Assembly (NCBI RefSeq): GCF_032191835.1
Contig: NC_083241.1
Span: 36,022,001-36,086,000, forward strand
Length of the DNA: 64,000 nt
Source of the DNA: Heteronotia binoei
Taxonomy: Eukaryota
Reading direction: 5' to 3'
The position numbers and the translations under genes were made by a program. Below, piece by piece: positions 2,818 to 49,108 of this stretch (its first letter is position 1; every line of letters begins with the position of its first letter). A model generated the notes under the pieces. The model had not been told where the DNA came from. It saw only the letters and a program-made list of their open reading frames with translations, and searched no databases.

Positions 2818-3637
2818 TAGTAGATTATCTGAAAGACCTCTGCCTGAGACCCAATAGAGCTGCTGTCAGTCTTAGACAATACTGATCTTGACACACCAAG
2901 GGTCTGATTCAGTATAAAACAGCTTCATGGTCGTTCATCCTTCACGTGGACCAGTTGTGTGTGGTGTGAATTGACCATAGAGGACTTCCTACTCTGTCAG
3001 ATATCTTTCCTGTGTATCTTTTAAAAAAGCATTCTCAGTCTCTGTAGTAGTCATGATTTAGTTTTTAAAAATTGCAATCTGGGGGGCATGTGAGGAATAT
3101 GTAGGGGTTGTGCATAGAAGCTCCCTAGATTTTAGTTTCTGCAAGCTCTTTGGGACTTGCAGCCTGAATTCTCACCTCCCCCCCCCCCCCCGCTTTTAAG
3201 TGTCTCTTGGCTGCTGTCAGCATTCATTCCTCATTGGTGCATGGTGGGTAGATAATTTAACCATTTTTTGTTAAGTATTTTGGGAATCCCACAAGGATAG
3301 TGCATGGGTGTCCTCATTTTGCTGTTTTTATGGATGGCAAGTGCAGCTAGTGGTCAGAGTGTCAGACTAGGACCTGGGAGAACCAGGTTCGAATCCCAGC
3401 TCTACCGTGGAAGCTTGCAGGGTGACCTTGGGCCAGTCGCACACACTCTGCCTAACCTGCCTCTCACAAAGTTGTTGCGAAGATAAAATGGAGGAAAGAG
3501 AACAGTGGAAACTGCCTTGGGTTGCCGTTGGGCGAAATGGAGGAAGTCAGTTGGCAGAACAGCCAGTCACTTTACTGTTAAACTATATGTATTGTGGTTT
3601 TGTTTAACTAATTTTTTTTTTTAAAGATACCTTTAAG

Positions 3638-13372: not shown

Positions 13373-13869
13373 CAGGGGTGGCCAAACTTGCTTAACATAA
13401 GAGCCACATAGAATAAACAGATGTTTGAGAGCCGCTAGGCAGGGCTCTTTCACACATATTGTGTGGCTCTTGAAGCCCCCACCACCCTGTCAGCTGGCTT
13501 GGAAAAGGCATTTCTGTCTTTAAATCACTTATTTTAGTTGGGTTGGAAAATGCATNNNNNNNNNNNNNNNNNNNNNNNNNNNNNNNNNNNNNNNNNNNNN
13601 NNNNNNNNNNNNNNNNNNNNNNNNNNNNNNNNNNNNNNNNNNNNNNNNNNNNNNNNNNNNNNNNNNNNNNNNNNNNNNNNNNNNNNNNNNNNNNNNNNNN
13701 NNNNNNNNNNNNNNNNNNNNNNNNNNNNNNNNNNNNNNNNNNNNNNNNNNNNNNNNNNNNNNNNNCTCACTCCCTCCACTGAAACATCTGATGTTCATGT
13801 CTTCCAGCTATCAAACATCTGATGTTTATTCTATGTGGCTCTTGTGTTAAGCAAGTTTGGCCACCCCTG
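13373..13869. mobile_element. hAT MITE spanning N-gap 13556-13765
   Basis: TIRs CAGGGGTGGCCAAACTTGCTTAAC / GTTAAGCAAGTTTGGCCACCCCTG. Confidence 0.8.
13556..13765. other. assembly gap (N-run)
   Basis: 210 N. Confidence 0.98.
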
Positions 13870-16600: not shown

Positions 16601-17007
16601 ATATGTAAACAACCAATAGATCTTCTTCGTGGTCTCTGTGCATCACACTGATGGGAGAAGGCGCCGGCGCCGATCACGATCGGTAACTTCAAAGCCACGG
16701 ATTTCCACGCCCCCGTCCTGGTGTGCATGCGCAGGCACACACACACACACACCCCCCCACGCGCATGCTCACCGGGACAGGAGCGGACATCCCGCCAGTT
16801 CTCTGAGATCAGTCAATCTTCGCTACGGTTGGTGGATTTCTTCATAGCGTTCGTTGGATTTCCAGAGAGGAATTTCTAGAGACTTTGACTTGCTATTACA
16901 TCGTCCGTGAGTGGGGAGAAAAAGGGCGTTCGTTATTTTTCCAACTTCCAGTTTCCCTTCCCTTTCCCCCCCACCTCCTCTCCCCCTCACCCCCGCGCTT
17001 TCCGCGC

Positions 17008-19275
17008 ATGGAAAAGCGCTGGGGATTTTTCAAACGGTGCAGGAAGTGTGGCAGCAAAATCGCACCTCCGGACGGCCACACCCTGTGCCTGCTTTGCCTG
17101 GAAGAGACGCACAAGTCAGACTCTTGCGCCCACTGCGCTAAGTTTTCCAGGCAAACGAGGAAAAATCGAGCGGCTCGTCTTGCCGCAGCCTTGATGGAAC
17201 AAGCGCTGTCCCCTCGCAAAATGGCGGCTTCATCGGAGAGCGTGCCAAAATCTTCGATGTCGGTGGTCGATACCGACAAGACCTCCTCCGACGCCGATAT
17301 GCCCCTAAAAAGACCGGGCTCGGCTTCAACGTCGGATACCTCTACACCAGCAAAGAGGTCCAAGGAAGTTAAGGGAGCTTCTTCGGAGCCGAAGAAGAAG
17401 GCGGATAAGCTGAAACATTGCAAAACCGCTCTTCGCTCCTCTCCAAAGTCTCCGCCGCACCCGACAGCGCTGGTTGTTCCACCTTTAAAGCTGTTTGCTT
17501 CTCCACGCCATCGACCGAGCCCACCGATGCTAGAGTCGATGTCGACGCAAATCGCAATCTCGTCCAGACTCCGACCGCGATTTAGAAGCAGCACAACGGT
17601 CAGGAAGAGAGGACAGTCCTGCAGACCTTATACAGGTAGAGGACGGCTCTCGGGATCGGTCCGACAGAGCCCAGCGGGACCGATCTCGGAGTCCTTATAG
17701 AGTTCCCCCCTCAATCTGAGACGTGAGCCAGTGAAAAGCGATCGCTCTAAAAGCTCGCAGCGGGACCAGTCTTGGAGCCCTCGACATCGACGAGATTTCC
17801 GGGTATCGAGAGACAGATCCCCAGATGACTGCTCCCCCAGAAGACATCGGGAGAACTCCCCATTGCAGAGGGCACCACCACCACTGCCATGGGATCAACG
17901 CCGATGGCAATATCTGTATGGATCATGTCCAATGCCATCGGTGTTTCCATGGTTTCCCCCACGCCAGACGGAGTGGGATCAGCGCTCGGAAGCGTCCTAT
18001 CGATCTAGGACATCCTACCGGCCTCAGAAGCACACCCCGTCGGCATCGATGTCAAAGCCTCCGACAGAGGAACCCCACAAGAAAAAGAAGTCCCCACGCC
18101 CTCCAGTCCAGGAGGTCACAACCCCCGATCCTGGTCGGGATAGAACATCTCAACCTTCTGAACAATCAGAATCCCCAGTAGGCTCCCCGGGGTCGACAGA
18201 AGGGTCAATACCGGAAGAACAAGGGGTGCTATCGTCTCCGGAGGAGCAATCACCATCCAACAAAGTGGGTGAGGATCAACCTATCTCCCCCTCGGAGGAC
18301 TTAAAATCATATGGGGACCTGATAAAGAGAATGGCACAGTCCCTGTCTCTTACAACGGTACAGCCTCAACCTATCATCACGGACAGCGTGTTCGACATAG
18401 TACAGAGGGACACATCAACAGCGGTCGCCTTCCCCCTGACAACGGTACTACTGCACACGGCAAAGGCGTCGTGGGACAAGCCTGCGTCCACACCTATATC
18501 CTCACGCAGGCTTGATCACATGTACCGTATACAAGAATCTACAGCGGACTTCCTTTTTAATCACCCCAAGCCAAACTCAGTAGTGGTAGCATCATCATTG
18601 AAAGCGAGGAAAACCCATGCTACCCCCCCAGACAAGGAAGGCAAGAAACTTGACAGTTTGGGACGACGGGTGTACTCGGCGGGTGCACTGGGGCTGAAGG
18701 TGGCGAACTACGCTGCATGTATGGGGCGATATCAATACGCCTTATGGGACCAACTGTCCACATTGCTACCAGGACTTCCGGAGCAGACTAAGAATGCCAT
18801 CCGGAAGATTCAGAATGAGGGCATGGCATTAGCCAAACAACAGTTGAACTCCGCGAAACATGCTGGCGACATTGGCGCAAAAACCCTCACGACAGCTGTC
18901 ACACTGAGGAGACATTCATGGCTCAGATCTACAGCGTTGCAAGCTGACACCCAGGCATACGTTGAGGATTTGCCATTTGATGGTAAAGGGCTGTTCAGTG
19001 CCAATACCGATACAGTATTGCAAGAAATGGATAAAAGCATCAGAACCTCCAGGAACTTGGGAGTTCCAGCCTCGTCCTGGCAGCAGAGCAAGCGACCATG
19101 GTCAAGACCTTGGATTAAAAAGCCATTCCCGAAGCAGTCAGGGGAACAACAACGGAGGCCCAAAACTGGGGCTCCCTTTGCTAAGAGCCAGTACAGCACT
19201 AAGTCCAAATACTCCCCGACCTCTTCGCAGTCATCTCGCCAGAAGGGAAACAGGCAACCCAAGCAGGGCCTTTGA
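17008..19275 (+). pseudogene. DIRS copy A ORF1 (gag-like): N-terminal Cys/His finger, low-complexity linker, conserved C-terminal domain
   Basis: ATG at 17008 (MEKRWGFFKRCRKC). ORFs 16885-17700 and 17731-19275 are in the same frame, separated by a TAG at 17698-17700 (single stop or compensating frameshifts). Ends KQGL*. Confidence 0.85.
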
Positions 19276-21172
19276 CTGTCCTTCCCCATATTTCTCCCTC
19301 CCCTCCTGTCCTTCGGACCGTACCCGGCTATGGCCTTTCTACCAGGCGTGGTCCACAAAAACAACAGATGAGTGGGTGTTATCGATAGTCCGGGTGGGCT
19401 ACCTGATAGAGTTTCAACAGGAACCAGAGGTTCCAACATTCGTCTACACAACCCCGTCACCAACGCTCCAAGAGGAGGTGAACGCCTTGCTCTGGAAAGA
19501 GGCCATAGAACTGGTCCCGTCGGACCAATTGAGACTGGGTTTCTGTTCCTGTTACTTTGCGATCCCAAAGAGGGATGGAGGCCTGCGTCCCATCATGGAC
19601 CTTCGGGGTCTCAACTTCTACATACCACATCAAAAGTTCCGAATGACTTCCTTGCCCAACATACTTCCGTTGCTGAATCCAGGAGATTGGATGGCCACCC
19701 TAGACCTGCAGGATGCTTATTTTCATATAAGCATCCATCCATCCCACAGAAAATTTCTCCGGTTCGCCATCGGGACTATGCACTATTAGTACAGAGCCCT
19801 GCCCTTCGGCCTGTCTACAGCCCCCAGGGTGTTTACAAAGACAATGGTAGTGGTGGCGGCTCATCTCAGATTACAGGGCATAGCGATATACCCATACATC
19901 AACAACTGGCTGCTGGTGGCCAAGTCAGAGGCCAGGCTCCTACAGCATATTTCCGCTACCCTGACCCTTCTGCAGAAGTTGGGGTTACAGGTGAACACAA
20001 AGAAATCTTGTCTACAGCCCTCTCAAAGAGTTCAGTTTATCGGGGCGATCTTGGACACGCAGGTGTGCAGGGCGTTTCTACCCGAGAAGCGGGCAAAGGA
20101 CATTATAGACCTGATACAGGTATTTCAGAGAAACCACACGGTCACCGCTCTTCAGGTGCAGCGTCTACTGGGCTTGATGGCATCCACGACAGCGGTGCTA
20201 GTCTTTGCCAGGTTCCACATGAGGAGCCTTCAGTTGTGGTTCATGAAGCACTTCAGGTGTGGGGAGGACTCCCCTCTACGCAGATTCTCCATTCCAAGGG
20301 AGGTTTTAGTGACTCTTCGGTGGTGGCAGCACAAGCGCAACCTACTAGAGGGAGCGCCGTTCTACAGGGCACGCCCAACAATAACCTTGACCTCGGACGC
20401 GTCCCTGTGGGGATGGGGCGCGCATGTGGATGGACTATGTGTGGGCGACAGATGGCCCAAGGACCACCTACAGTACCATATCAACTTCCTGAAGCTTCTA
20501 GCGATTCATCACGCTATTATTTCCTTCAGGCCGTTGCTAGCAGATCAGACAGTGGCGATTCTGACGGACAACACCACAGCACTGGCCTACATAAACAGGC
20601 AGGGGGGCACGGTGTCCCGGAAGCTCTGTTTTCTAGCGTTACGCATTTGGGAGATCTGCAGAGAGATGAGCACGTATCTGACAGCGGCTCATCTTCCGGG
20701 CGAACAAAACGTGTGTGCGGACTTTCTCAGTCGGAGAGGGGCGTCCCTACACGAATGGGAGCTCAATTGGAGTTTCCTTCAACCGGTCTTTCAGGAGTGG
20801 GGGACGCCGGAGATAGACGTCTTCGCCACCCACGAAAACAGGAAGTGCAGAAGATTCTGTTGCCGAGGGGGGAGAGATCCACTGTCACTGGGGGACGGCC
20901 TCCTGCTCCAGTGGGACCGTCGTCACGTGTACCTGTTTCCCCCAATCCCACTAATCACGCGGGTAGTACAAAAACTATACAGGGAACGCCCGAGAGGGAT
21001 TCTGGTCACCCCATGGTGGCCCAGGCAACACTGGTTTGCCCCCGTTCTGCAGCTGTCCGAGGGCATCTTTCACCACTTTCCCTCAGTGCCGGACTTACTG
21101 TTCTCCCAACAGGGACTAATAGTCCACCACGATGTTCCACACCTAAAACTGACGGCGTGGAGGATCAGGTGA
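19271..21172 (+). pseudogene. DIRS copy A pol: reverse transcriptase, RNase H, adenine-methyltransferase-like domain
   Basis: RT motifs KRDGGLRPIMDLR, LDLQDAYFH and YRALPFGLSTAPRVFTK; RNase H motifs TSDASLWGWG and TDNTT; MT motifs DVFAT and YLFPP. One in-frame TAG at 19787-19789, and YxDD reads YINN. Confidence 0.92.
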
Positions 21173-22188
21173 ACCCGCTGTCGGCAAGGGTTCAGCATGT
21201 TATCCTTAACTGTAGAAGGAAGTCTACGAGAAAATCGCATGCCTATAAGTGGACACAGTTTGTTCAGTTCACCTCTGGTGGCGGGGGGGACCCGGCGAAA
21301 ATGGGCCTCCCCAGCATTCTCGACTTTTTGCTCTCCTTGCTAGACAAGGGATTGGCAATATCCTCCATTAGGGTTTACTTGGCCATCTCAGCCAACCATG
21401 AACATATCGAAGGCCGATTGGTGTTTGCGCACCCCACCACAAAGAGTTTTCTGCGGGGCTTGGCGCGGCTGTACCCCTCTGTTAGGGACCCTACTCCGTC
21501 TTGGGATTTACCGGGGGTCTTGGAGGCCCTCATGGGGAAACCCTTTGAGCCTATGGCCTCGTGCTTCTTGCAGTTATTATTGTGGAAGACGGCGTTCCTG
21601 GTGGCTATTACCTCAGCATGGAGGGTTGGGGAGCTGGCGGCATTGTGATGTGATGACCCCTACCTTCGTTTCTGGCCAGAGGGTGTGTGGTTGCGCCCAG
21701 ATGTGACTTCCTTGCCCAAAGTGGTGTCCTCCTTCCACTTGAACAGAGAAATTTGTTTGCCAGTCTATTTCCCGAACCCGGCTACGGATTCGGAAAGGCG
21801 GCTTCATGCTCTAGACGTAAAGCGGGCACTCTCCTTTTACTTACACAGAGTGGGGCCCTCGCGGAAGGACCCTAGGCTTTTCGTCTCCTACGCCTCTGCC
21901 TCTTTGGGGCAGAGAATCTCGTCGCAGAGACTATCGAAATGGTTGACAGAGACGATTAGGCTGTGTTATCTACTGCGGAAGCGGCCTCTTCCAGGGCCTA
22001 TTAAAGCGCACTCCACAAGGGCAATGGCGACCTCAGCTGCATTCATGAAGGGAGTGCCATTGCGAGACATTTGTAAAGCAGCTACCTGGTCCTCCCCGCA
22101 TACGTTCATTAAGCATTATGCGTTGGACCTTCACTGGAGGCATAGTTCGTCTGTGGGCCATGCAGTTCTGCAGTCGCTCACCTGTTGA
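19372..22188 (+). pseudogene. DIRS copy A ORF3: long frame overlapping pol, ending in the tyrosine recombinase (domain ~21170-22188)
   Basis: ORFs 19372-21648 and 21685-22188 are in frame across a single TGA at 21646-21648. YR motifs: SAWRVGEL, AHSTRAM, ATW, KHY. Confidence 0.9.
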
Positions 22189-24474
22189 CGGACCGTGCAA
22201 CCCTCCTCCAGGTAGGCTGTTAGCTTGCTATTCTCCCATCAGTGTGATGCACAGAGACCACGAAGAAGATAAACAGGTTTCCTACCTGTAACTGATGATC
22301 TTCGAGTGGTCATCTGTGCAGTCACACTACCCGCCCACTTTCCCCACTGCTGCTGGTCCGTCCCAGGGGCTCATGCAGCGGTCAGAAGGAACTGGCGGGA
22401 TGTCCGCTCCTGTCCCGGTGAGCATGCGCGTGGGGGGGTGCCTGCGCATGCGCACCAGGACAGGGGCGCGGAAATCCGCGACTTTGAAGTTACCGATCGT
22501 GATCGGTGCCGGCGCCTTCTCCCATCAGTGTGACTGCACAGATGACCACTCGAAGATCATCAGTTACAGGTAGGAAACCTGTTTTTATAGTGACCAAATA
22601 ACTAAGATGTAATTCATGGAATAGCAAACATCACAAGAAGCATCATTTAGAGGTACACAATCAAAATAAATAATTCTTCCACCAAGGAGTCCTGACGGGC
22701 AGGCAGTCGACTTAAAAGGTCCTGCTTCGATTACTCTTCCAGCATAGGGTGCTCCATGAATCATTACAAAAGGCGTCCAAATTTAAAATGAATTTGCAGC
22801 AATGTTTTCAGTGCATTTCGCAACTGCTTAAATGCTTTCAATGAATAAATGAGAACTCGAAATCTCTCGTGTGATTTCAAACCGGCACTTCGCTCAAAAA
22901 CGGCTCAAGGCCGTTTTCCTCCCCCTGCACACTTTCTGACCCTCTACCCCCAGGTGGGGCTTGGCAACCATAGATAGGGGATAGTTTGAGGTTTATTTCT
23001 CTCCCACCTCCCCTTGTGCATAAGAAAATTTGCTTTGAGTGCACCTAAGGTGCATGGGCCTTGAGCTGGATGGCCCCTAGGCTAGCCCAGTCTCATCAGA
23101 TCTTGAAAGCTAAGTAGTCTTGGCCCTGGTTAGTCTTTGGATGGGAGACCTCCAAAGGGTTGCTACGCAGAGACAGGCCATGGCAAACCACCTCTGTCTG
23201 GTCTCTTGCCTTGAGAAACCCCACGGGGTCATCATCAGTCAGCTGTGATTTGGAGCCAAAGAAAAAAGGTTCATGAGACTCATCGAGGAGAAATGAAGCA
23301 CAAGCTTTCAAGTCTCACAGTGTCCCTAAAGCACAATATTTGGTCTGGCAAAGAGCTTAAGGGAATGTGGGTAAACGCATGTACTCCGCCAGCCTCCCGC
23401 TATCTGCTCCAGATACACAAAGAGCTCAGTTCAGCAGCACAGAGCGTTATCGGCAGTCAGAGGCCTTGGCCCAGAATGTTTGAAGTGCATTTGTGCCACC
23501 CTCCCCCCCCCCCCCCAGTTCTCAGTGAATGCATTTCTATCGCTTTTAGATTAGAGCACAGATGGAGTGAGACTGTGTCATCAAAATTCTTCTTGCGCTC
23601 CGTAAGCGAGCAGGATACAGAGGAGCATTACGGAACTTTTGTTGTTATGCACGAGCGTGGCACATCCACACTTTTTTTTTTTTTTTAGCATTTCTGAGGT
23701 TCTTTCCAAAAAAAGAAACCATGTTTGAGTTGCTGAACGCAGCCACCTTGGCTTTTCTTTACTGAACGTTTCCAGCCACAAACAAGCCGCTGATCTGAAT
23801 TACGACCTTGCCTTCTGACGGAGTTACACATGTATAAATTGCAGAAGAGGAACATCGGAAGTCTTTTGTGGAGATAAATTGCCTTTTCCCCTTCCCCGTG
23901 GCCAAATGTAACCACAAAACAAGCCTCAAGGGCTTGATTGCTTACTATCCTAAGTCTCCTCCACCCCTTAAGAACAGCAAGTCCCACATTCTTGGGACCG
24001 AGAAACCGGTAGTCTCCTGCATTTGCGTTCCTTCCTACTGAAATCGACACACCTTGCCCCGAAGTGCATTGGCAAGCACTAACGCAAAAGCCGTCTGTAC
24101 TTACGTAGAGATAGCGAATGCACTCTCCTGTGTTTGTCTTGGAGTGGCTGGTGACTGCAAACGCCTGTTGAGCTTTCAGGAGGTCAGAACCTTCTTGTGT
24201 GTGTTTTTAAAGTGCCAACTGGGACGCGTGGTGGTAAGGCCCTACAGGAAAGAAAATTAGCCGCCTAAGGTTCTGTTTTGGACACATCCTCCAGGTGGGT
24301 TCTGTTCTGTGTTCCTCCCCCTTTCCATTGTTAGGGGAGGGAGGTACTTTTTTTTTGCCTTTGCAATATCGCTCTGAAGCGCAAACAGGAGATAAGGGCA
24401 AAAAAAAAAAGAACAGAAAAAGAAAGGCCACTTGCTTCTGATGAATGGGCGTTTATTTGGCAACTCTTCTCTGC

Positions 24475-42424: not shown

Positions 42425-42905
42425 TTATCTATCAGACAGAAGGAACTCAAGTTTAGCTTTTTCTGGAAGGCCTGAAATTTTTTCAATTAATGGGGTGATG
42501 ATCTTACGATCTTCTTCGTGGTCTCTGTGCTTCACACTCATGGGATAGAGCGCCTGCACCGATCCCCGAATCGGTACCTAAAAAGCCCGGGATTTTTTCG
42601 CGCTCGGCACCAACGGGCATGCTCAAGGATCCCAGTGCGCATGCTCACCGGCGCCAGCACGAGGATCCCGCCAGTTCCTTTCTGACCGCTGCACTGAGAG
42701 GATCTCCTTTCGTGTCCCCGGTCGGTAAAGTAATCTTAGGATTGCCTTTCTTGTTGTATATAGCCTGTTTGTTATTTTTGTAGCGTAGTTAGTTGTTTGA
42801 TAGTTAGTGTTGTAAAAAAAAAAATGTTGGACTTGCCCTTCGGGGCCCAGTTTTCCCCCGTTTTTCCCCTCAGACACTTTCCTGGGTGGTTTTTCCTTGG
42901 CGTCT

Positions 42906-45392
42906 ATGGAAAGACGTTGGGGGTTTTTTAAGAGGTGCCGCTCCTGTGGGAAGAAGATTGCCCACCCCCCGACGGCCATTCCCTCTGTCTCCTTTGTTTG
43001 GGCGAGGGACATTGTGTGGATTCTTGCTCGCACTGCCTGAGTTTTTCCAAACAAACTCGCAAGAATCGAGCAGCAAGGCTTTCAGCTGCGTTTGTTGAGT
43101 TGGTGCTTCTTCCTCAAAAGATGGCATCGGGCCCGTCGGTACCAATGGGAGAGGCTGTGGCCCCGACAGTCACATCGACCGATACATCGCCGATCAGGAC
43201 CCAGATGCCAGTCGAGTGCGGGCGTTCCACAAAGTGACCTTCTGAAGGGTCAGTGGACACCCCAGCTAAGAAGCGTCGGGATGACTCGGGGACCCAATCA
43301 TCCGCACTGAAGAAGGTGAAATCTAAGGAGAATCGGAAGAAGAGATCGTCCTGCACTCCTTCCCCTTCTCATGACGCTTCAACATCGATGTCGACCGCTC
43401 CACCGAGGAAGATCTTGGCATCCCCAAATCGTAGCCCTTCGGTGTTGAGAGGCAGTGCTTTGCAGCAGTTGCGTCTATTGGCATCGGAGCAAGAGATCGA
43501 CCTCACTCAGTGCTCCCATTCTTTGGGGTCGAGGCGTCGCAGTGAGAGCGACTCTGTCTCGGAGGTGGAGGTGGAGGTGTCGGCACCGATGGAGCCGTTG
43601 GCACCGCTGGATCAGGCAAGAAGTCGGAGAGAGCTGGAACCGACCACTGTAGCTCGCCACTTCCCACCGCTTCCACCGTGGGAGCAGCGCCAGTGGCCTC
43701 CCTACGCCTATCCAGTGGTACCCCCCTCGGGAGTTTGCAGACTGGGACCAGCAATCCGAGGCATCCCATATGTCGAGGCTTTCCCAGCATTCTAGGCGGC
43801 GTCCCTCAGCATCGATGTCCGTCCTGCCCAAAAGACACGGCGTGGTGGTGGAGGAAGTCCAGCCTGGGTCGTTGGTGTCGATCCGGTTACCCATCAGAGA
43901 GTCAAGGCCGGTGTTCTCGGAACATTCTTTGAGGAGAGAGTCTTCATCGTCGGACTGCAAGGTCAGTACCGATGATCCAGACAGGGCTCTGGAACCTTCG
44001 CCAGTGTCTCATACCACTGAGGATCTTCCCATTTCACCATCGGAGGATCTAAAGTCATATGGGGATCTGGTGAAGAAGATGGCACTCTCCCTCTCTCTCC
44101 CGGTGACACAACCGCAACCCGTTGTGGACGAAACCGTATTCGACATCATGCAGCAGGATACATCTACAGCGGTTGCCCTGCCTGTTACGAAGGTCATCTT
44201 ACAGGCAGTGAAGGAGCCCTGGACAAAGCCTGCTTCTACACCTGTGTCATCAAGAAGGTTGGACCACATGTACCGCATCCAAGAGGCCGGTGCTGAATTT
44301 CTCTTCACGCATCCAAAGCCCAATTCGGTGGTCGTATCCTCCTCGTCAAAGGCCTGCAAGATGCACTCCTCTCCACCAGATGAGGGAAAGAAGTTGGACA
44401 ACGTTGGGAGGAAGTTTTACTCTGCTGGGGCGCTGGGAGTAAAGGTATCTAACTATGCTGCGTGCATGGCTAGATAACAATACTCAGTGTGGGAACAACT
44501 TACCCCCCTCTTGTCTTCCCTGAGTGAGGAGAAGAGGTCTGTTGCAAAGAAGTTGCAGAAGGAAGGCTTTGCTATGGCCAAGCAACAACTGGCTGCAGCA
44601 AAGCATATGGAGGATTTCTCAGCAAGAACCATCACTTCTGCTGTCTGCTTCTGCCGCCACTCCTGGCTCAGGTCAGTGGCCCTCCAGCAAGACACCAGAG
44701 CTTTCGTTAAAGATCTGCCCTTCAGGGCGAAGGCCTCTTCAGCTTGACCACCGACAGTGCACTCCAGGAAATAATAATAATAATAATAAATTTTTATTTG
44801 TATCCCGCCCTCCAAGCCTAGGCAGGCTCAGGGCGGCTAACAGCATTTCATAAAACATACAATGATAAATATAAACTTTAAATTTAACAAATATAAAACT
44901 TTAAGTTTAACGTCATTTAAAAACCAGTCAATATAATTAAAATTTTTATAGCTTAATCTGACAGTGACGATGGCATTTTTGACGCTAGTTCTGTCAGTTT
45001 ACAAAGTTTACACAATGACATAGGTCCTTAAATAGGACCGTGTTGGCGGATCCTTAATTAACAACCTTATTCAGCAGTCCGTATATGCTAGCTTGAAGAG
45101 GGTGGTCTTGCAGGCCCTGCGGAACTGATCAAGGTAAGCATATGGATAAAAGCATAAAAAATTCAGGAACCTGGATGTCCCGCCGTCTTCCAGAGCTACG
45201 AAACCAAAACAGTGGAACAAACCTTGGTCAAAGAAGCCATATCAAAAGTTCTCCCCGGAACAGCAGTGGAGACCTCGCTCTGCCCAACCTGAGAGTAGGT
45301 CCCCATACAGGGGGAACAATAGAAACCGCTACGCTTCTGCACAGACCACCGGCAAGTCCAAGGGCACTCACCCTCAAAAGCAGGGCCTTTGA
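42906..45392 (+). pseudogene. DIRS copy B gag (frameshifted; interrupted by L2 insertion 44771-45141)
   Basis: ATG at 42906 (MERRWGFFKRCRSC). Pieces in ORFs 42935, 43253, 43770 and 44487 are homologous to copy A gag. Ends KQGL* at 45390-45392. Confidence 0.85.
44771..45141 (-). mobile_element. 5'-truncated L2-clade LINE 3' end nested in DIRS copy B gag
   Basis: Reverse complement resembles the 3' end of the L2 at 50260-50540 and has an (ATT)n tail. It splits the gag sequence DSALQE|MDKSIK, which is contiguous (DTVLQEMDKSIR) in copy A. Confidence 0.85.
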
Positions 45393-47323
45393 CTTTCTGG
45401 TAGCACGCATCACCGTCCCCACTTCTTCTTCGTCTATCTACCTCCGCCCATTCCTGTCAGCCTGGGAGTCCATCTCTATGGACAGGTGGGCGCTTTCCAT
45501 CGTCATGGAAGGCTACAAAATAGATTTTGCTCAGATTCCAAACCAATCTGTGGTAATCACCACACACCCTTCCCCACCTCTGCTGGCGGAGGTGAGCAAC
45601 CTCCTACAGAAACACGCCATAGGACGGGTCCTGGTGGAGGCCAGGACGGGAGGCTTCTACTCTTGTTACTTCCTGGTTCCCAAGCAGGACGGGGGTTTGA
45701 GACCAATCATGGACCTTCGGAATCTGAACAAGTTTATTCTGTATCAGAAGTTCAGAATGTCCACTCTGCAAACAATTCTGCCCCTCATCAACCAAGGGGA
45801 CTGGATGGCAAAGCTGGACCTCAAGGATGCCTACTTCCACATCAGCATCCATCCTGCGTTCAAATGTTTCCTTCGGTTTGCAGTAGGTTCTCAACACTTC
45901 CAGTTCAAGTCCCTTCCGTTCAGCCTGTCCACTGCACCTCGGGTGTTCACGAAGATGATGAGCGTTGTGGCTGCCCACCTCCGGCTTCAAGGGATAGTCG
46001 TCTTTCCATACATCGACGATTGGCTCCTTGTGGCGGAGTCGAAGGAAAGTTTGTCAAACCATATTGCCACCACTCTTCGTCTTCTTCACACCTTGGGTCT
46101 GCAGGTCAATTTGGAGAAATCACACCTTACTCCATCACAGACAGTTCAGTTCATAGGGGCTTTGCTGGATACAAACCTTCATCGCGCTTTCCTGCATTAG
46201 CAGAGAGCGATGGACATTATCAACCTTGTCAAACTTCTGCAGAGTTGAAAGTGGGGCACGGCGCAGCAGCTGCAGCAGATGCTGGGGCTGATGGCGGCGA
46301 CTACAAGCGTGCTGATCTTTGCAAAGCTGAGGATGAGAGGCCTACAGCTTTGGTTTCTTCGTCAGTTTCGACCGTTAAGGGACTCACCTCGAAAGAGGTT
46401 TGCAATTCCACCTGTGACACTTCAAACACTGCAGTGGTGGAAATCAAAGGACAACATTTGTCAGGGAGCTCCCTTCCACCTACCTGTACCAACAGTGACG
46501 ATCACAACAGATGAGTCTTTATGGGGTTGGGGGGCCCACATGGACGCTCTGTTTGTGGGGGGCCCTTGGCCTTTGAAATTGACTCATTGCCATATAAGTT
46601 ACCTGGAATTGCTGGCAGTTCATTTTGCTCTTCAATCCTTCCCACCCCATGGTGGCGGGGAAGGTTGTTGCTCTGCTTACGGACAATACCACTACCCTTT
46701 GTTACATCAACAGACAGGGAGGGACAGTTTCTCGACGGCTCTGTGCGCTGGCACTGGAACTGTGGTCGGAGTGCCTGGACCACAACATATTTGTGAAGGC
46801 AGCGCATCTCCCAGGGGTGCTCAACCTGCAAGCAGACTCCCTCAGCAGGGGTGCGGCTTCCCCGTACGAGTGGGAGATACAGTGGCGCTTCCTTCAACTC
46901 GTGTTTCAGCTCTGGGGGTATCCTCAGGTGGACGTCTTTGCCACAGCCGAGAACCGGAAGTGTCCTCTGTTCTGCTCCAGAGGGGGCTCGGATCCAGAGT
47001 CGTTGGGAGACGGTCTGCTGTTCCCGAGGAAAGGTCGGTTCCTATATCTGTTCCCACCTCTGCCACTATTGACAAGGGTGGTCAACAAGATCGCAAGAGA
47101 GAGACCATGCTGCATCCTGGTGACTCCGTGGTGGCCTCGGAAGAACTGGTTCCCGATCTTGCTCCAACTGGTGAGGGGGGTGTTCTACCAGTTTCTGGCG
47201 GAACTGGATCTTCTGTTAGTTAAGGACGGTCATGTATTCCATCACAACGTGCCCCACCTGAAGCTGACAGCGTGGTTCATCGACCCTGTGAGTTCTCCAG
47301 CAGAGTCCAACACGTTTTCCTGA
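45388..47323 (+). pseudogene. DIRS copy B pol (RT/RNase H/MT)
   Basis: KQDGGLRPIMDLR, FPYIDDWLL (YxDD intact), TDNTT, DVFAT and YLFPP. Stops at 46198 and 46246, frameshift near 46640. Confidence 0.9.
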
Positions 47324-48308
47324 ATAGCAGGAAGCTGTCTACCCGCGCTTCTTATGATAGGAAGTGGCGGAAGTTTCTTCAGTTTTTAGTTGATCCTACA
47401 GTTTCGCCCCAGAGGGTGGGACTGCTGGTTATTTTTGAGTTTTTGTTATCTCTGGTGGATGCTGGCCTTGTTTTTTCCTCCATTAAAGTTTATCTGGCGG
47501 CAATATTTGCATTCCATGAACCAGTGGAGGGGCATTCAGTTTTTGCACACCCTCATTCTAAGAGATTTTTGAAGGGTTTGCTTAAGCTTCATCCTCCTTC
47601 GAGATCACCCCCACAGTTGTGGGATTTGACTCTAGTGTTGGACAGGCTGACTCGGCGTCCTTTTGAGCTGATGGCCACATGCTCGTTACAGCTCCTATCT
47701 TGGAAGACTGCTTTTTGGTAGCCATCACATCAGCACGCCATGCAGGGGAGCTCACGGCTATGTGTTGTGACTACCCATATTTAGCTTTTCAGGAGTCTGG
47801 AGTGTCCTTAGCTCCTGATATTTCCTTTCTCCCCAAGGTGGTTTCTCAGTTCCACCTTAACTTAGAAGTTTGGTTGCCCACGTTTTATCCTACACCTTCC
47901 TCGGATGAGGAACATAGGTTGCATGCTTTAGATGTTAAGCATGCCTTATTGTTTTATTTGAGTCGCTCCAAGAGTTTTCGTAAGGACCAGCATCTTTTTG
48001 TTTCTTATGCTGCTCCTAAGTTAGGTTCCAGAATCTCGTTTCAGCGGCTTTCAAAATGGCTCACTAAGACTATTAAACTGTGTTACTTGATGGCTAAGAA
48101 GCCGTTACCTGGGCCTATTCGTGGACACTCTACAAGAGCGATGGCGACGTCGGTGGCGTTCCTGAAAGGCGTTTCTCTGACGGATGTTTGCAAGGCTGCC
48201 ACCTGGTCCTCTCCGCATACCTTTATGAAGCACTACGTGCTGGACGTGCATGCTCAACAGAGGACTCGTCTGGGAGCTGCGGTGCTGCAAGCTGTTTCTT
48301 CCGGTTGA
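47272..48308 (+). pseudogene. DIRS copy B tyrosine recombinase
   Basis: Homologous to copy A YR (GHSTRAM, ATWSSPHTF, KHY). Frameshift near 47715. SARHAGEL has lost the Arg expected before (V/A)GEL. Confidence 0.9.
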
Positions 48309-49108
48309 CCGTCTTCCCGCCTCCAGGTATGTCTTGCTTGCTAATGTCCCATGAGTGTGAAGCACAGAGACCACGAAGAAGATAGACAGGTTGCTTACCT
48401 GTAACTGTAGATCTTCAAGTGGTCATCTGCGCATTCACACTACCCGCCCTCCTTCCCCACTGCTGACGGTCCCCCTCCAGTAGGGGCTTCCAGCGGTCAG
48501 GAAGGAACTGGCGGGATCCTTGCGCTGGCGCCGGTGAGCATGCGCACTGGGATGCCCACGCATGCCCATTGGTGCCGAGCGCAAAAAAATCCCGGGCTTT
48601 TTAGGTACCAATTCGGGGATCGGCGCAAGCACTCTATCCCATGAGTGTGAATGTACAGATGACCACTCGAAGATCTACAGTTACAGGTAAGCAACCTGTC
48701 TATCTGCCTTATAATATGGGCATATGAAAAACATGTGCTCTGTAGTCAACCTCAATTAACGGGTAAGTACAGAGCCTTTCTGTGTGTGTTGTATGTTGCT
48801 TACGACGACACTCTGTATTAATGATCCCCAAAATTTCTTTGACAGCCTTGCTCAGATCCTGCAACTGAGTCGATCCATCTCCCGGTGGGCCTCCCTCTTT
48901 TCTACTGCCTGCAACTTTTCTGTGATTGGTTTTTCCAGCAAGCCTTCTCAACTTTAAACAGGACATCTTTCTCATATGCACCTCCAACATTTCTTTCTTT
49001 CCTCCCGCCATCTAAAATATTTTCATAACACTTCTTCTATGCATGAAGCAGCTTCTAGAAATATATAGCAAATTCAAAGACATTATCATCTAGAAACTAC
49101 TTAAGATG

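What the first reader, a model, noticed from the sequence alone, without database searches (positions are those of the whole stretch)
19261..19277. Candidate three-way recoding site at the DIRS gag stop: CUU-UGA-C shared by two divergent elements
Seen: both DIRS copies carry the identical 17-mer AAGCAGGGCCTTTGACT (19261-19277 and 45378-45394) while the sequences on either side differ. In both, gag ends KQG-L(CTT)-TGA and the pol frame is exactly +1 (TTT GAC, reading S-R-A-F-D). The first ATG after this point in the copy A pol frame lies inside RT (PIMDLR), downstream of conserved pol residues, and the upstream in-frame ATG at 18980 has no counterpart in copy B. In the gag frame, copy B is stop-free from the TGA at 45390 to 46511. 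Copy A is stop-free apart from TGAs at 19369 and 21646, and runs to the recombinase end at 22188. Established: CUU UGA C is the bacterial prfB +1 frameshift site, Ty1 (CUU AGG C) and antizyme (UCC UGA) use related +1 shifts, and UGA followed by C is a leaky stop context. Inference: the two copy A TGAs are CpG decay of CGA, and one UGA could yield Gag (termination), Gag-Pol (+1 slip) and Gag-ORF3/YR (read-through). I do not know whether this has been described for DIRS elements; a literature check is needed.
Basis: partly seen in the sequence, partly recalled or inferred. Interest (0 to 1): 0.85.

Follow-up and report, generated by a model that had tools for sequence, protein, structure and literature searches.

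The report
Leaky gag stop in DIRS retrotransposons
Two decayed DIRS retrotransposon copies share a conserved island around the gag stop codon (CTT-TGA-C), and about 65 related elements suggest this weak stop is where ribosomes leave gag for the recombinase frame by read-through and probably for the polymerase frame by a +1 shift.

Summary
The 17-mer occurs only at 19261-19277 and 45378-45394, in two DIRS1-like elements that are about 60% identical. It is the longest exact match in their coding parts and it covers the gag stop.

Both copies are dead, with internal stops, indels and an insertion. I therefore tested the idea on about 90 related loci.

- **Read-through: strongly supported.** In nearly all intact relatives gag ends in one stop, usually TGA followed by C, and often by CTA or CAA. 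The same frame then stays open for about 980 codons, across all of pol, to the tyrosine recombinase. Synonymous shuffles of pol predict about 24 stops in that frame.
- **+1 shift into pol: supported indirectly.**
  - For: the substitution pattern changes from gag phase to pol phase at the stop. A third of the elements have no ATG ahead of the first conserved pol motif. A last codon of the form NTT is enriched about tenfold and is kept in three clades, including the window's clade.
  - Against: most families use other last codons, one close relative has AAC-TGA-C, and I found no stimulatory RNA structure.
- **Exceptions exist.** A few elements close the gag frame soon after the stop.

The three-way model is plausible but unproven. 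I found no description of it in the searchable literature.

The parts
16620..22584 (+). DIRS1-like element, copy A (decayed)
   Evidence: ITRs at 16643-16801 and 22389-22533. The ICR at 22231-22328 is complementary to both termini. Gag, RT/RNase H/methyltransferase and recombinase ORFs are present.
17008..19275 (+). Copy A gag frame, with an internal TAG at 17698-17700 and terminal TGA at 19273-19275
   Evidence: There is a weak Pfam LAP2alpha hit, as reported for DIRS gag (PMC9210276). The basic tail has almost no T at codon position 2.
19261..19277 (+). Conserved 17-mer. Last gag codon CTT at 19270-19272, stop TGA at 19273-19275, then C. This is the proposed recoding site.
   Evidence: The core GC-NTT-TGA-CT is shared by L001, L002, L087 and L090.
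19274..21172 (+). Copy A pol (RT, RNase H, methyltransferase) in the +1 frame, broken by TAG at 19787-19789
   Evidence: There is no ATG between the stop and the RT motif PIMDLR.
19276..22188 (+). Copy A ORF3 in the gag frame. A stop-free stretch overprints pol and is followed by the tyrosine recombinase (about 21190-22188). It is broken by TGA at 19369 and TGA at 21646.
   Evidence: Relatives carry sense codons at both positions.
42509..48705 (+). DIRS1-like element, copy B (more decayed)
   Evidence: ITRs at 42531-42691 and 48491-48651, with the ICR at 48347-48441. It has a roughly 390-nt insertion at 44750-45135, a 1-nt indel after 45142 and another near 46620, and several stops.
45378..45394 (+). 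Second copy of the 17-mer. Last gag codon CTT at 45387-45389, stop TGA at 45390-45392.
45391..47323 (+). Copy B pol in the +1 frame, with stops at 46198 and 46246 and a frame change near 46620
45393..48308 (+). Copy B ORF3/recombinase frame. It is open from the gag stop to the TGA at 46512 and is then broken by indels and stops.

Best explanation
The 17-mer is the fossil of a recoding hub at the gag stop of DIRS1-like retrotransposons.

In active relatives most ribosomes would terminate at a deliberately weak stop (UGA followed by C) and make Gag.

A fraction would read through the stop. They would continue in the gag frame through a stop-free stretch of about 700 codons that overprints pol. 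That stretch shows no amino-acid constraint of its own. They would end in the tyrosine recombinase, giving a Gag-spacer-recombinase fusion.

Another fraction would shift +1 at the stop. In the window's clade this would be peptidyl-tRNA re-pairing from CUU, UUU or GUU to UUU while the slow UGA sits in the A site. The product would be Gag-Pol, with the junction peptide KQGL-DCPSP in copy A.

**Shown:** the architecture, the stop context and the conservation.
**Inferred:** that ribosomes actually read through, that they shift at this codon, and in what proportions.

The two window copies are inactive.
For: **Read-through.**
- There is a single stop between gag and a frame that stays open for a median of 977 codons. 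That frame has a stop within 45 codons in 1 of 65 relatives and within 220 codons in 2 of 65. The third frame has a stop within 45 codons in 61 of 65.
- The ORF3 frame has no stop across the whole pol overlap in 61 of 64 loci. Synonymous shuffles of pol give a mean of 23.6 stops and a minimum of 4.
- The first ATG in that frame is scattered from 24 to 1641 nt after the stop.
- Stop contexts are the classic leaky ones: TGA-C in 39 of 63 junctions, TGA-CTA in 11, and CAA-TAG-CAA or CAA-TAA-CAA in two. The contrast with pol and recombinase stops gives Fisher P = 6e-15, not corrected for phylogeny.
- One locus, L021, has gag and ORF3 as a single 1626-codon ORF with no stop.

**+1 shift.**
- In 19 close pairs the substitution pattern is in gag phase up to the stop and in pol phase from +15 to +60 onwards.
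- Positions -2, -1, +3 and +4 around the stop are conserved above background.
- 21 of 60 loci have no pol-frame ATG before the first conserved pol motif. Where ATGs exist they are scattered.
- The last codon is NTT in 13 of 65 junctions against 2% in the preceding 30 codons (P = 3e-9). No NTT occurs at codons -2 to -4.
- NTT-TGA is kept in three separate clades of the pol tree.
- L086, from Anolis sagrei, keeps TTT-TGA-C although its gag frame is closed after the stop.
- L090 has GTT-TGA-C within a 16 of 17 match to the 17-mer.
Against: - No experiment, RNA data or peptide data were available.
- The slippery codon is absent in about 80% of families. They use CAA, TCC, AAA, AAG and others.
- L088, inside the window's clade, has AAC-TGA-C.
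- No downstream structure was found. Fold z-scores in the clade mostly lie between about 0 and +2, RNAalifold predicts no pairs, and there is no Rfam hit.
- The +1 phase of pol is not independent of the read-through constraint.
- L085 (Rhineura) ends gag with AAG-TAG-TAT-TAA. L085 and L086 close the gag frame for about 650 nt, so the recombinase can be expressed without read-through in some families.
- L007 and L045 have gag in frame with pol instead.
- The one difference between L090 and the window 17-mer is synonymous in the pol frame and non-synonymous in gag. This hints that the pol frame might be read a few codons upstream of the stop.
Confidence: 0.45

Rival explanations
1. Read-through only. 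The weak stop gates Gag against a Gag-spacer-recombinase fusion. Pol is made another way, for example by non-AUG or internal initiation, a spliced or subgenomic RNA, or a shift elsewhere near the stop. The NTT codon and the flanking conservation would tune read-through or the end of Gag.
For: The read-through signatures are superfamily-wide, whereas the slippery codon is not. L088 has AAC-TGA-C. The last two bases before a stop are known to affect read-through (my own knowledge).
Against: - 21 of 60 loci have no ATG for pol.
- The pol coding phase starts at the stop.
- L086 keeps TTT-TGA-C without an open frame 0.
- NTT is specifically enriched at the last codon.
Confidence: 0.25
2. +1 frameshift only. 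Gag-Pol is made at the shifty stop. The recombinase frame is entered later, from pol by a -1 event or by its own initiation, and its continuity with gag is inherited rather than used.
For: L085 and L086 have a long ORF3 that starts about 650 nt after the gag stop, so another entry route must exist in those families. ORF3 is -1 relative to pol throughout.
Against: - The first 220 codons after the stop are open in 63 of 65 relatives, although that stretch is otherwise poorly constrained.
- The stop context is the leakiest known.
- No canonical -1 slippery heptamer was found in L085 or L086.
Confidence: 0.12
3. No recoding signal. The 17-mer is conserved because two protein frames overlap there, or because of the Gag C-terminus, or by chance between two related copies.
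For: A run of 17 somewhere in about 5 kb at 60% identity is not rare (expected about 0.35 runs, my own calculation). The pol-frame peptide SRAFD is identical in winA, winB and L090.
Against: - The run sits exactly on the gag stop.
- The same core recurs in L001, L002, L087 and L090, inside otherwise unalignable sequence.
- The pol frame upstream of the stop shows no coding signature, and its openness is explained by local codon composition.
- Across clades no pol-frame residue before the F is conserved.
Confidence: 0.08

Closest known systems
DIRS1-like retrotransposons with a 'long ORF overlap' between pol and the recombinase ORF (Piednoel et al. 2011, PMC3266345)
   Same: Same element type and the same three ORFs. 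The long overlap of the recombinase ORF with pol is described there for half of 28 elements, including AcDIRS2 of Anolis.
   Different: That paper and the others I could read (PMC9210276, PMC7192593, PMC5633606, PMC3783388, PMC6681497, PMC2685390) do not say how pol and the recombinase are translated. They do not note that the recombinase ORF is in frame with gag behind one weak stop.
Gag-Pol stop-codon read-through of gammaretroviruses (MuLV), and the UGA-CUA and CAA-UAG-CAA leaky contexts of plant and animal viruses (my own knowledge)
   Same: A single leaky stop at the end of gag, followed in frame by a long ORF. The hexanucleotide contexts are the same in many DIRS families.
   Different: - The read-through product here would be Gag-recombinase, not Gag-Pol.
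- It passes through about 700 overprinted codons.
- No downstream pseudoknot was found.
Shifty-stop +1 frameshifting: bacterial prfB (CUU-UGA-C) and the closterovirus ORF1a/1b site proposed at GUU-UAG-C (my own knowledge)
   Same: The heptamer has the same form, NUU followed by a stop followed by C. The downstream ORF is in +1 and has no start codon.
   Different: - This is a eukaryotic retroelement.
- There is no Shine-Dalgarno-type stimulator.
- The site is not demonstrated experimentally.
- The same stop would also be read through.
Ty1 (CUU-AGG-C) and antizyme (UCC-UGA-U) +1 frameshifting (my own knowledge)
   Same: The Ty1 site has a CUU P-site codon and a gag-to-pol +1 shift. The antizyme site has a stop codon in the A site. 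Seven DIRS families end gag with TCC-TGA.
   Different: The A-site codon is a stop, not a rare sense codon as in Ty1. No 3' pseudoknot as in antizyme was found.

Membership tests
DIRS1-like retrotransposon | Pol with RT, RNase H and methyltransferase domains, and no protease or DDE integrase | tested here: met
   Pfam gives weak RVT_1, RT_RNaseH and Dam hits. Pol relatives match with E down to 1e-127.
DIRS1-like retrotransposon | Tyrosine recombinase ORF at the 3' end | tested here: inconclusive
   There is no Pfam hit. The ORF is homologous between copies and with the 3' ORF of relatives. Its position and the literature support calling it the recombinase.
DIRS1-like retrotransposon | Inverted terminal repeats plus an internal complementary region matching both termini | tested here: met
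Programmed stop-codon read-through | Leaky stop context (UGA-C, UGA-CUA, UAG-CAA) | tested here: met
   TGA-CTG and TGA-CTT in the window. TGA-C in 39 of 63 relatives against 7 of 106 control stops.
Programmed stop-codon read-through | Long in-frame ORF after the stop, kept open in relatives | tested here: met
   The exceptions are L085 and L086.
Programmed stop-codon read-through | Downstream stimulatory RNA structure (needed only for some classes) | tested here: not met
Programmed stop-codon read-through | Read-through product observed | not testable with these tools
   No expression or peptide data were available.
Shifty-stop +1 frameshift (prfB or closterovirus type) | P-site codon able to re-pair in +1 (NUU-U), with a stop in the A site | tested here: met
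   CTT-TGA-C in both copies. The codon is NTT in 8 of 9 clade members and in 13 of 65 junctions overall.
Shifty-stop +1 frameshift (prfB or closterovirus type) | Downstream ORF in +1 with no start codon of its own, with coding starting at the site | tested here: met
Shifty-stop +1 frameshift (prfB or closterovirus type) | Shift site conserved wherever the ORF arrangement is conserved | tested here: not met
   About 80% of families with the same arrangement have non-slippery last codons, and L088 has AAC.
Shifty-stop +1 frameshift (prfB or closterovirus type) | Trans-frame product observed | not testable with these tools
   No expression or peptide data were available.
Antizyme-type +1 frameshift | UCC-UGA site with a 3' pseudoknot | tested here: not met
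   The window has CTT, not TCC, and no structure was found. TCC-TGA does occur in 7 other DIRS families.

The most novel reading that the evidence does not exclude
Across DIRS1-like retrotransposons one deliberately weak gag stop acts as a three-way switch between termination, read-through and a +1 shift, and so sets the ratio of Gag, Gag-recombinase and Gag-Pol. The read-through path runs through about 700 overprinted codons that are selected only to contain no stop.
Probability: 0.4. Interest if true: 0.85.

Novelty: new variant of a known kind. Interest (0 to 1): 0.7.

Why it matters
DIRS elements have no protease, and nobody has explained how their three overlapping ORFs are translated. 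If the gag stop is a recoding hub, that explains two things.
- It explains why the recombinase ORF overlaps the whole of pol: the overlap is a passage that only needs to stay open.
- It explains how protein ratios are set from one RNA.

It would also be the first case I know of in which a single stop codon feeds two alternative extension frames. That gives the recoding field a natural system in which read-through and +1 shifting compete at one codon. The signature (a single weak stop, frame 0 open for about 980 codons, pol in +1) would also help annotate DIRS elements.

Tried and rejected
1. **A shift site or pol start well upstream of the stop.**
   - The pol frame is open for 40-145 codons upstream of the stop.
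   - Codon shuffles within 30-codon blocks reproduce this: median 74 against 86 observed, with only 6.6% of loci at P<0.05.
   - The cause is that the basic gag tail has almost no T at codon position 2.
   - Substitutions upstream are in gag phase only.
2. **AUG-initiated pol.** 21 of 60 loci have no candidate ATG, and the others are scattered.
3. **AUG-initiated ORF3.** The first ATG lies 24-1641 nt after the stop, yet the frame is open from the stop itself.
4. **Downstream stimulatory structure.** There was no signal in the clade, no consensus pairs and no Rfam family.
5. **Splice acceptor at CAG|G.** The sequence upstream is purine-rich, not a pyrimidine tract. This could not be tested with RNA data.
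6. **Canonical -1 slippery heptamers in L085 and L086.** None was found.
7. **Literature.** Goodwin & Poulter 2001/2004, Poulter & Goodwin 2005 and Poulter & Butler 2015 could not be read, so prior mention there is not excluded.
8. **Loci that could not be used.** The Varanus locus L003 was too decayed to use. Two look-ups returned no DNA.
Full report
**The observation**

The 17-mer AAGCAGGGCCTTTGACT occurs exactly twice in the window, at 19261-19277 and 45378-45394, with 0.03 matches expected by chance.

It lies in two DIRS1-like retrotransposons.
- Copy A spans 16620-22584 and copy B spans 42509-48705.
- Each has inverted terminal repeats and an internal complementary region that matches both termini.
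- Each carries gag, an RT/RNase H/methyltransferase pol and a 3' recombinase ORF.

The two elements are only 60% identical overall and 53% identical around the site.
- The 17-mer ties for the longest exact run in the coding part.
- All other runs of 17 or more lie in the 3' replication signals.
- By my own calculation, a run this long covering one pre-specified position has P of about 1e-3 at 60% identity.

Both copies are fossils.
- Copy A has a TAG in gag at 17698, a TAG in pol at 19787, and TGAs at 19369 and 21646 in the third ORF.
- Copy B has a roughly 390-nt insertion at 44750-45135, at least two 1-nt indels and several stops.

**Relatives**

The window holds only these two dead copies, so I collected relatives.
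- A pol search and contig look-ups gave L001, L002, L087, L088 and L090 from metagenome or read assemblies. They also gave L085 (Rhineura), L086 (Anolis sagrei) and L089 (Emydura).
- One metagenome scan gave 80 more DIRS1-like loci, L005-L084.
- Pol identity to the window is 35-59%.
- In the pol tree, winA and winB are sisters inside a 7-row clade with L001, L087, L002, L086 and L088.

**A shared architecture**

In 65 loci where both gag and pol could be found, pol is +1 to gag.
- Four more loci looked different.
- On inspection one of these four is standard and the others appear damaged.

Gag ends in a single stop and the same frame then stays open.
- The median open length is 977 codons, ending in the recombinase.
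- The gag frame has a stop within 45 codons in 1 of 65 loci and within 220 codons in 2 of 65.
- In the third frame 61 of 65 loci have a stop within 45 codons.
- Across the pol overlap the gag frame has no stop in 61 of 64 loci. Synonymous shuffles of the pol codons give a mean of 23.6 stops and never fewer than 4.

The long overlap itself is known (PMC3266345). The papers I could read do not describe its continuity with gag behind one stop.

**Evidence for read-through**

- The gag stop is TGA in 52 of 63 non-identical junctions, TAG in 10 and TAA in 1.
- The next base is C in 43 and G in 14.
- TGA-C accounts for 39 of 63 gag stops, against 5 of 60 pol stops and 2 of 46 recombinase stops. Fisher P is 6e-15, not corrected for phylogeny.
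- The next codon is CTA in 11 junctions and CAA in 7. Two loci read CAA-TAG-CAA or CAA-TAA-CAA. To my knowledge these are the classic leaky contexts of plant and animal viruses.
- The first ATG in this frame is scattered from 24 to 1641 nt after the stop, yet the frame is open from the stop itself.
- In 19 close pairs the overlapped part of this frame shows only the pol substitution pattern. It carries no amino-acid constraint of its own and merely avoids stops. This is what a translated spacer would look like. The non-overlapping recombinase part shows its own coding phase.
- L021 has gag and this frame as one 1626-codon ORF without any stop.

**Evidence for a +1 shift at the stop**

- In the same pairs, substitutions are in gag phase up to the stop and in pol phase from +15 to +60 onwards.
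- Positions -2, -1, +3 and +4 are conserved above background.
- The first conserved pol motif, (P)VGGRL..F...W, lies 18-170 nt after the stop. 21 of 60 loci have no pol-frame ATG ahead of it, and the ATGs that exist are scattered.
- The long open pol frame upstream of the stop is not evidence for an upstream shift. The basic gag tail has almost no T at codon position 2, and block-wise codon shuffles reproduce the openness.
- The last gag codon is NTT in 13 of 65 junctions against 2% in the preceding 30 codons (P = 3e-9). No NTT occurs at codons -2 to -4. CTT alone is 5 of 65 against 1 of 1950.
- NTT-TGA is held in three separate clades of the pol tree. One 8-row clade carries only NTT or TCC, and TCC-TGA is the antizyme heptamer.

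Junctions in the window's own clade:

| Locus | Last codon, stop, next base |
|---|---|
| winA, winB, L001, L002, L087 | CTT-TGA-C |
| L090 | GTT-TGA-C (16 of 17 match to the 17-mer) |
| L086, L089 | TTT-TGA-C |
| L088 | AAC-TGA-C |

- An alignment of six clade members shows the core GC-NTT-TGA-CT as an island in otherwise unalignable sequence.
- L086 keeps TTT-TGA-C although its gag frame closes after the stop. This points to a role other than read-through.

**Evidence against, and limits**

- About 80% of families with the same ORF arrangement have non-slippery last codons. L088 lacks the slippery codon inside the window's clade.
- The +1 phase of pol is not independent evidence. It follows from read-through plus the fixed pol/ORF3 overlap.
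- I found no stimulatory structure. Fold z-scores in the clade mostly lie between about 0 and +2, copy A gives +1.95, RNAalifold predicts no pairs, and there is no Rfam hit.
- L085 ends gag with tandem stops. L085 and L086 close the gag frame for about 650 nt before a long open stretch, so another route to the recombinase exists in some squamate families. I found no canonical -1 heptamer there.
- L007 and L045 have gag in frame with pol behind one stop, with the third ORF at -1. They are scattered in the tree and may be individual variants.
- The single difference between L090 and the window 17-mer is silent in the pol frame and changes Leu to Val in gag. This leaves open a shift a few codons upstream.

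**Conclusion**

- The read-through leg is well supported by comparison: about 0.75 for the families with the long overlap.
- The +1 leg is plausible in the window's clade: about 0.5.
- The full three-way model stands at about 0.45.

Nothing here is experimental.

In the searchable literature I found no account of how DIRS pol and recombinase are translated. The key older papers were not readable, so prior mention cannot be excluded.

Noticed in passing
L021:1446-6326: Gag and the recombinase ORF form one continuous 1626-codon ORF with no stop. A TGA sits one base out of frame at 3313-3315, in frame with pol.
   Followed up: partly
L045:371-5196 and L007:926-6162: Two intact-looking elements have gag in frame with pol behind a single stop (TAG-G in L045, TGA-A in L007). 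The recombinase ORF is at -1 and opens 43-105 nt before the stop. They are scattered in the pol tree.
   Followed up: partly
L085:4117-7039 and L086:4180-7107: In these Rhineura and Anolis sagrei elements the gag frame is closed by many stops for about 650 nt after the gag stop and then stays open for 527-758 codons. L085 ends gag with the tandem stops TAG-TAT-TAA. In L086 the recombinase is in yet another frame. How it is expressed there is unexplained.
   Followed up: partly
Pol stops of L001-L088: Pol ends with TAG in 41 of 60 loci, followed by C or G in 29. This is unlike the recombinase stops. It may reflect the overlapping frame or a further signal.
   Followed up: no
window:44750-45135: A roughly 390-nt insertion in copy B gag contains an (AAT)n run and many stops.
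   Followed up: no
window:49355-50322: Plus-strand ORFs carry a non-LTR (LINE-type) reverse transcriptase motif (...QYADDTQLY...), just downstream of copy B.
   Followed up: no
window:2619-2777 and 13556-13765: Two runs of N (159 and 210 bases). They were left untouched.
   Followed up: no
Gag tails of 65 loci, including window:19150-19272: The gag C-terminal tails are Arg/Gly/Lys-rich, often as RGRG repeats, with virtually no T at codon position 2. This alone keeps the +1 frame open upstream of the stop.
   Followed up: yes
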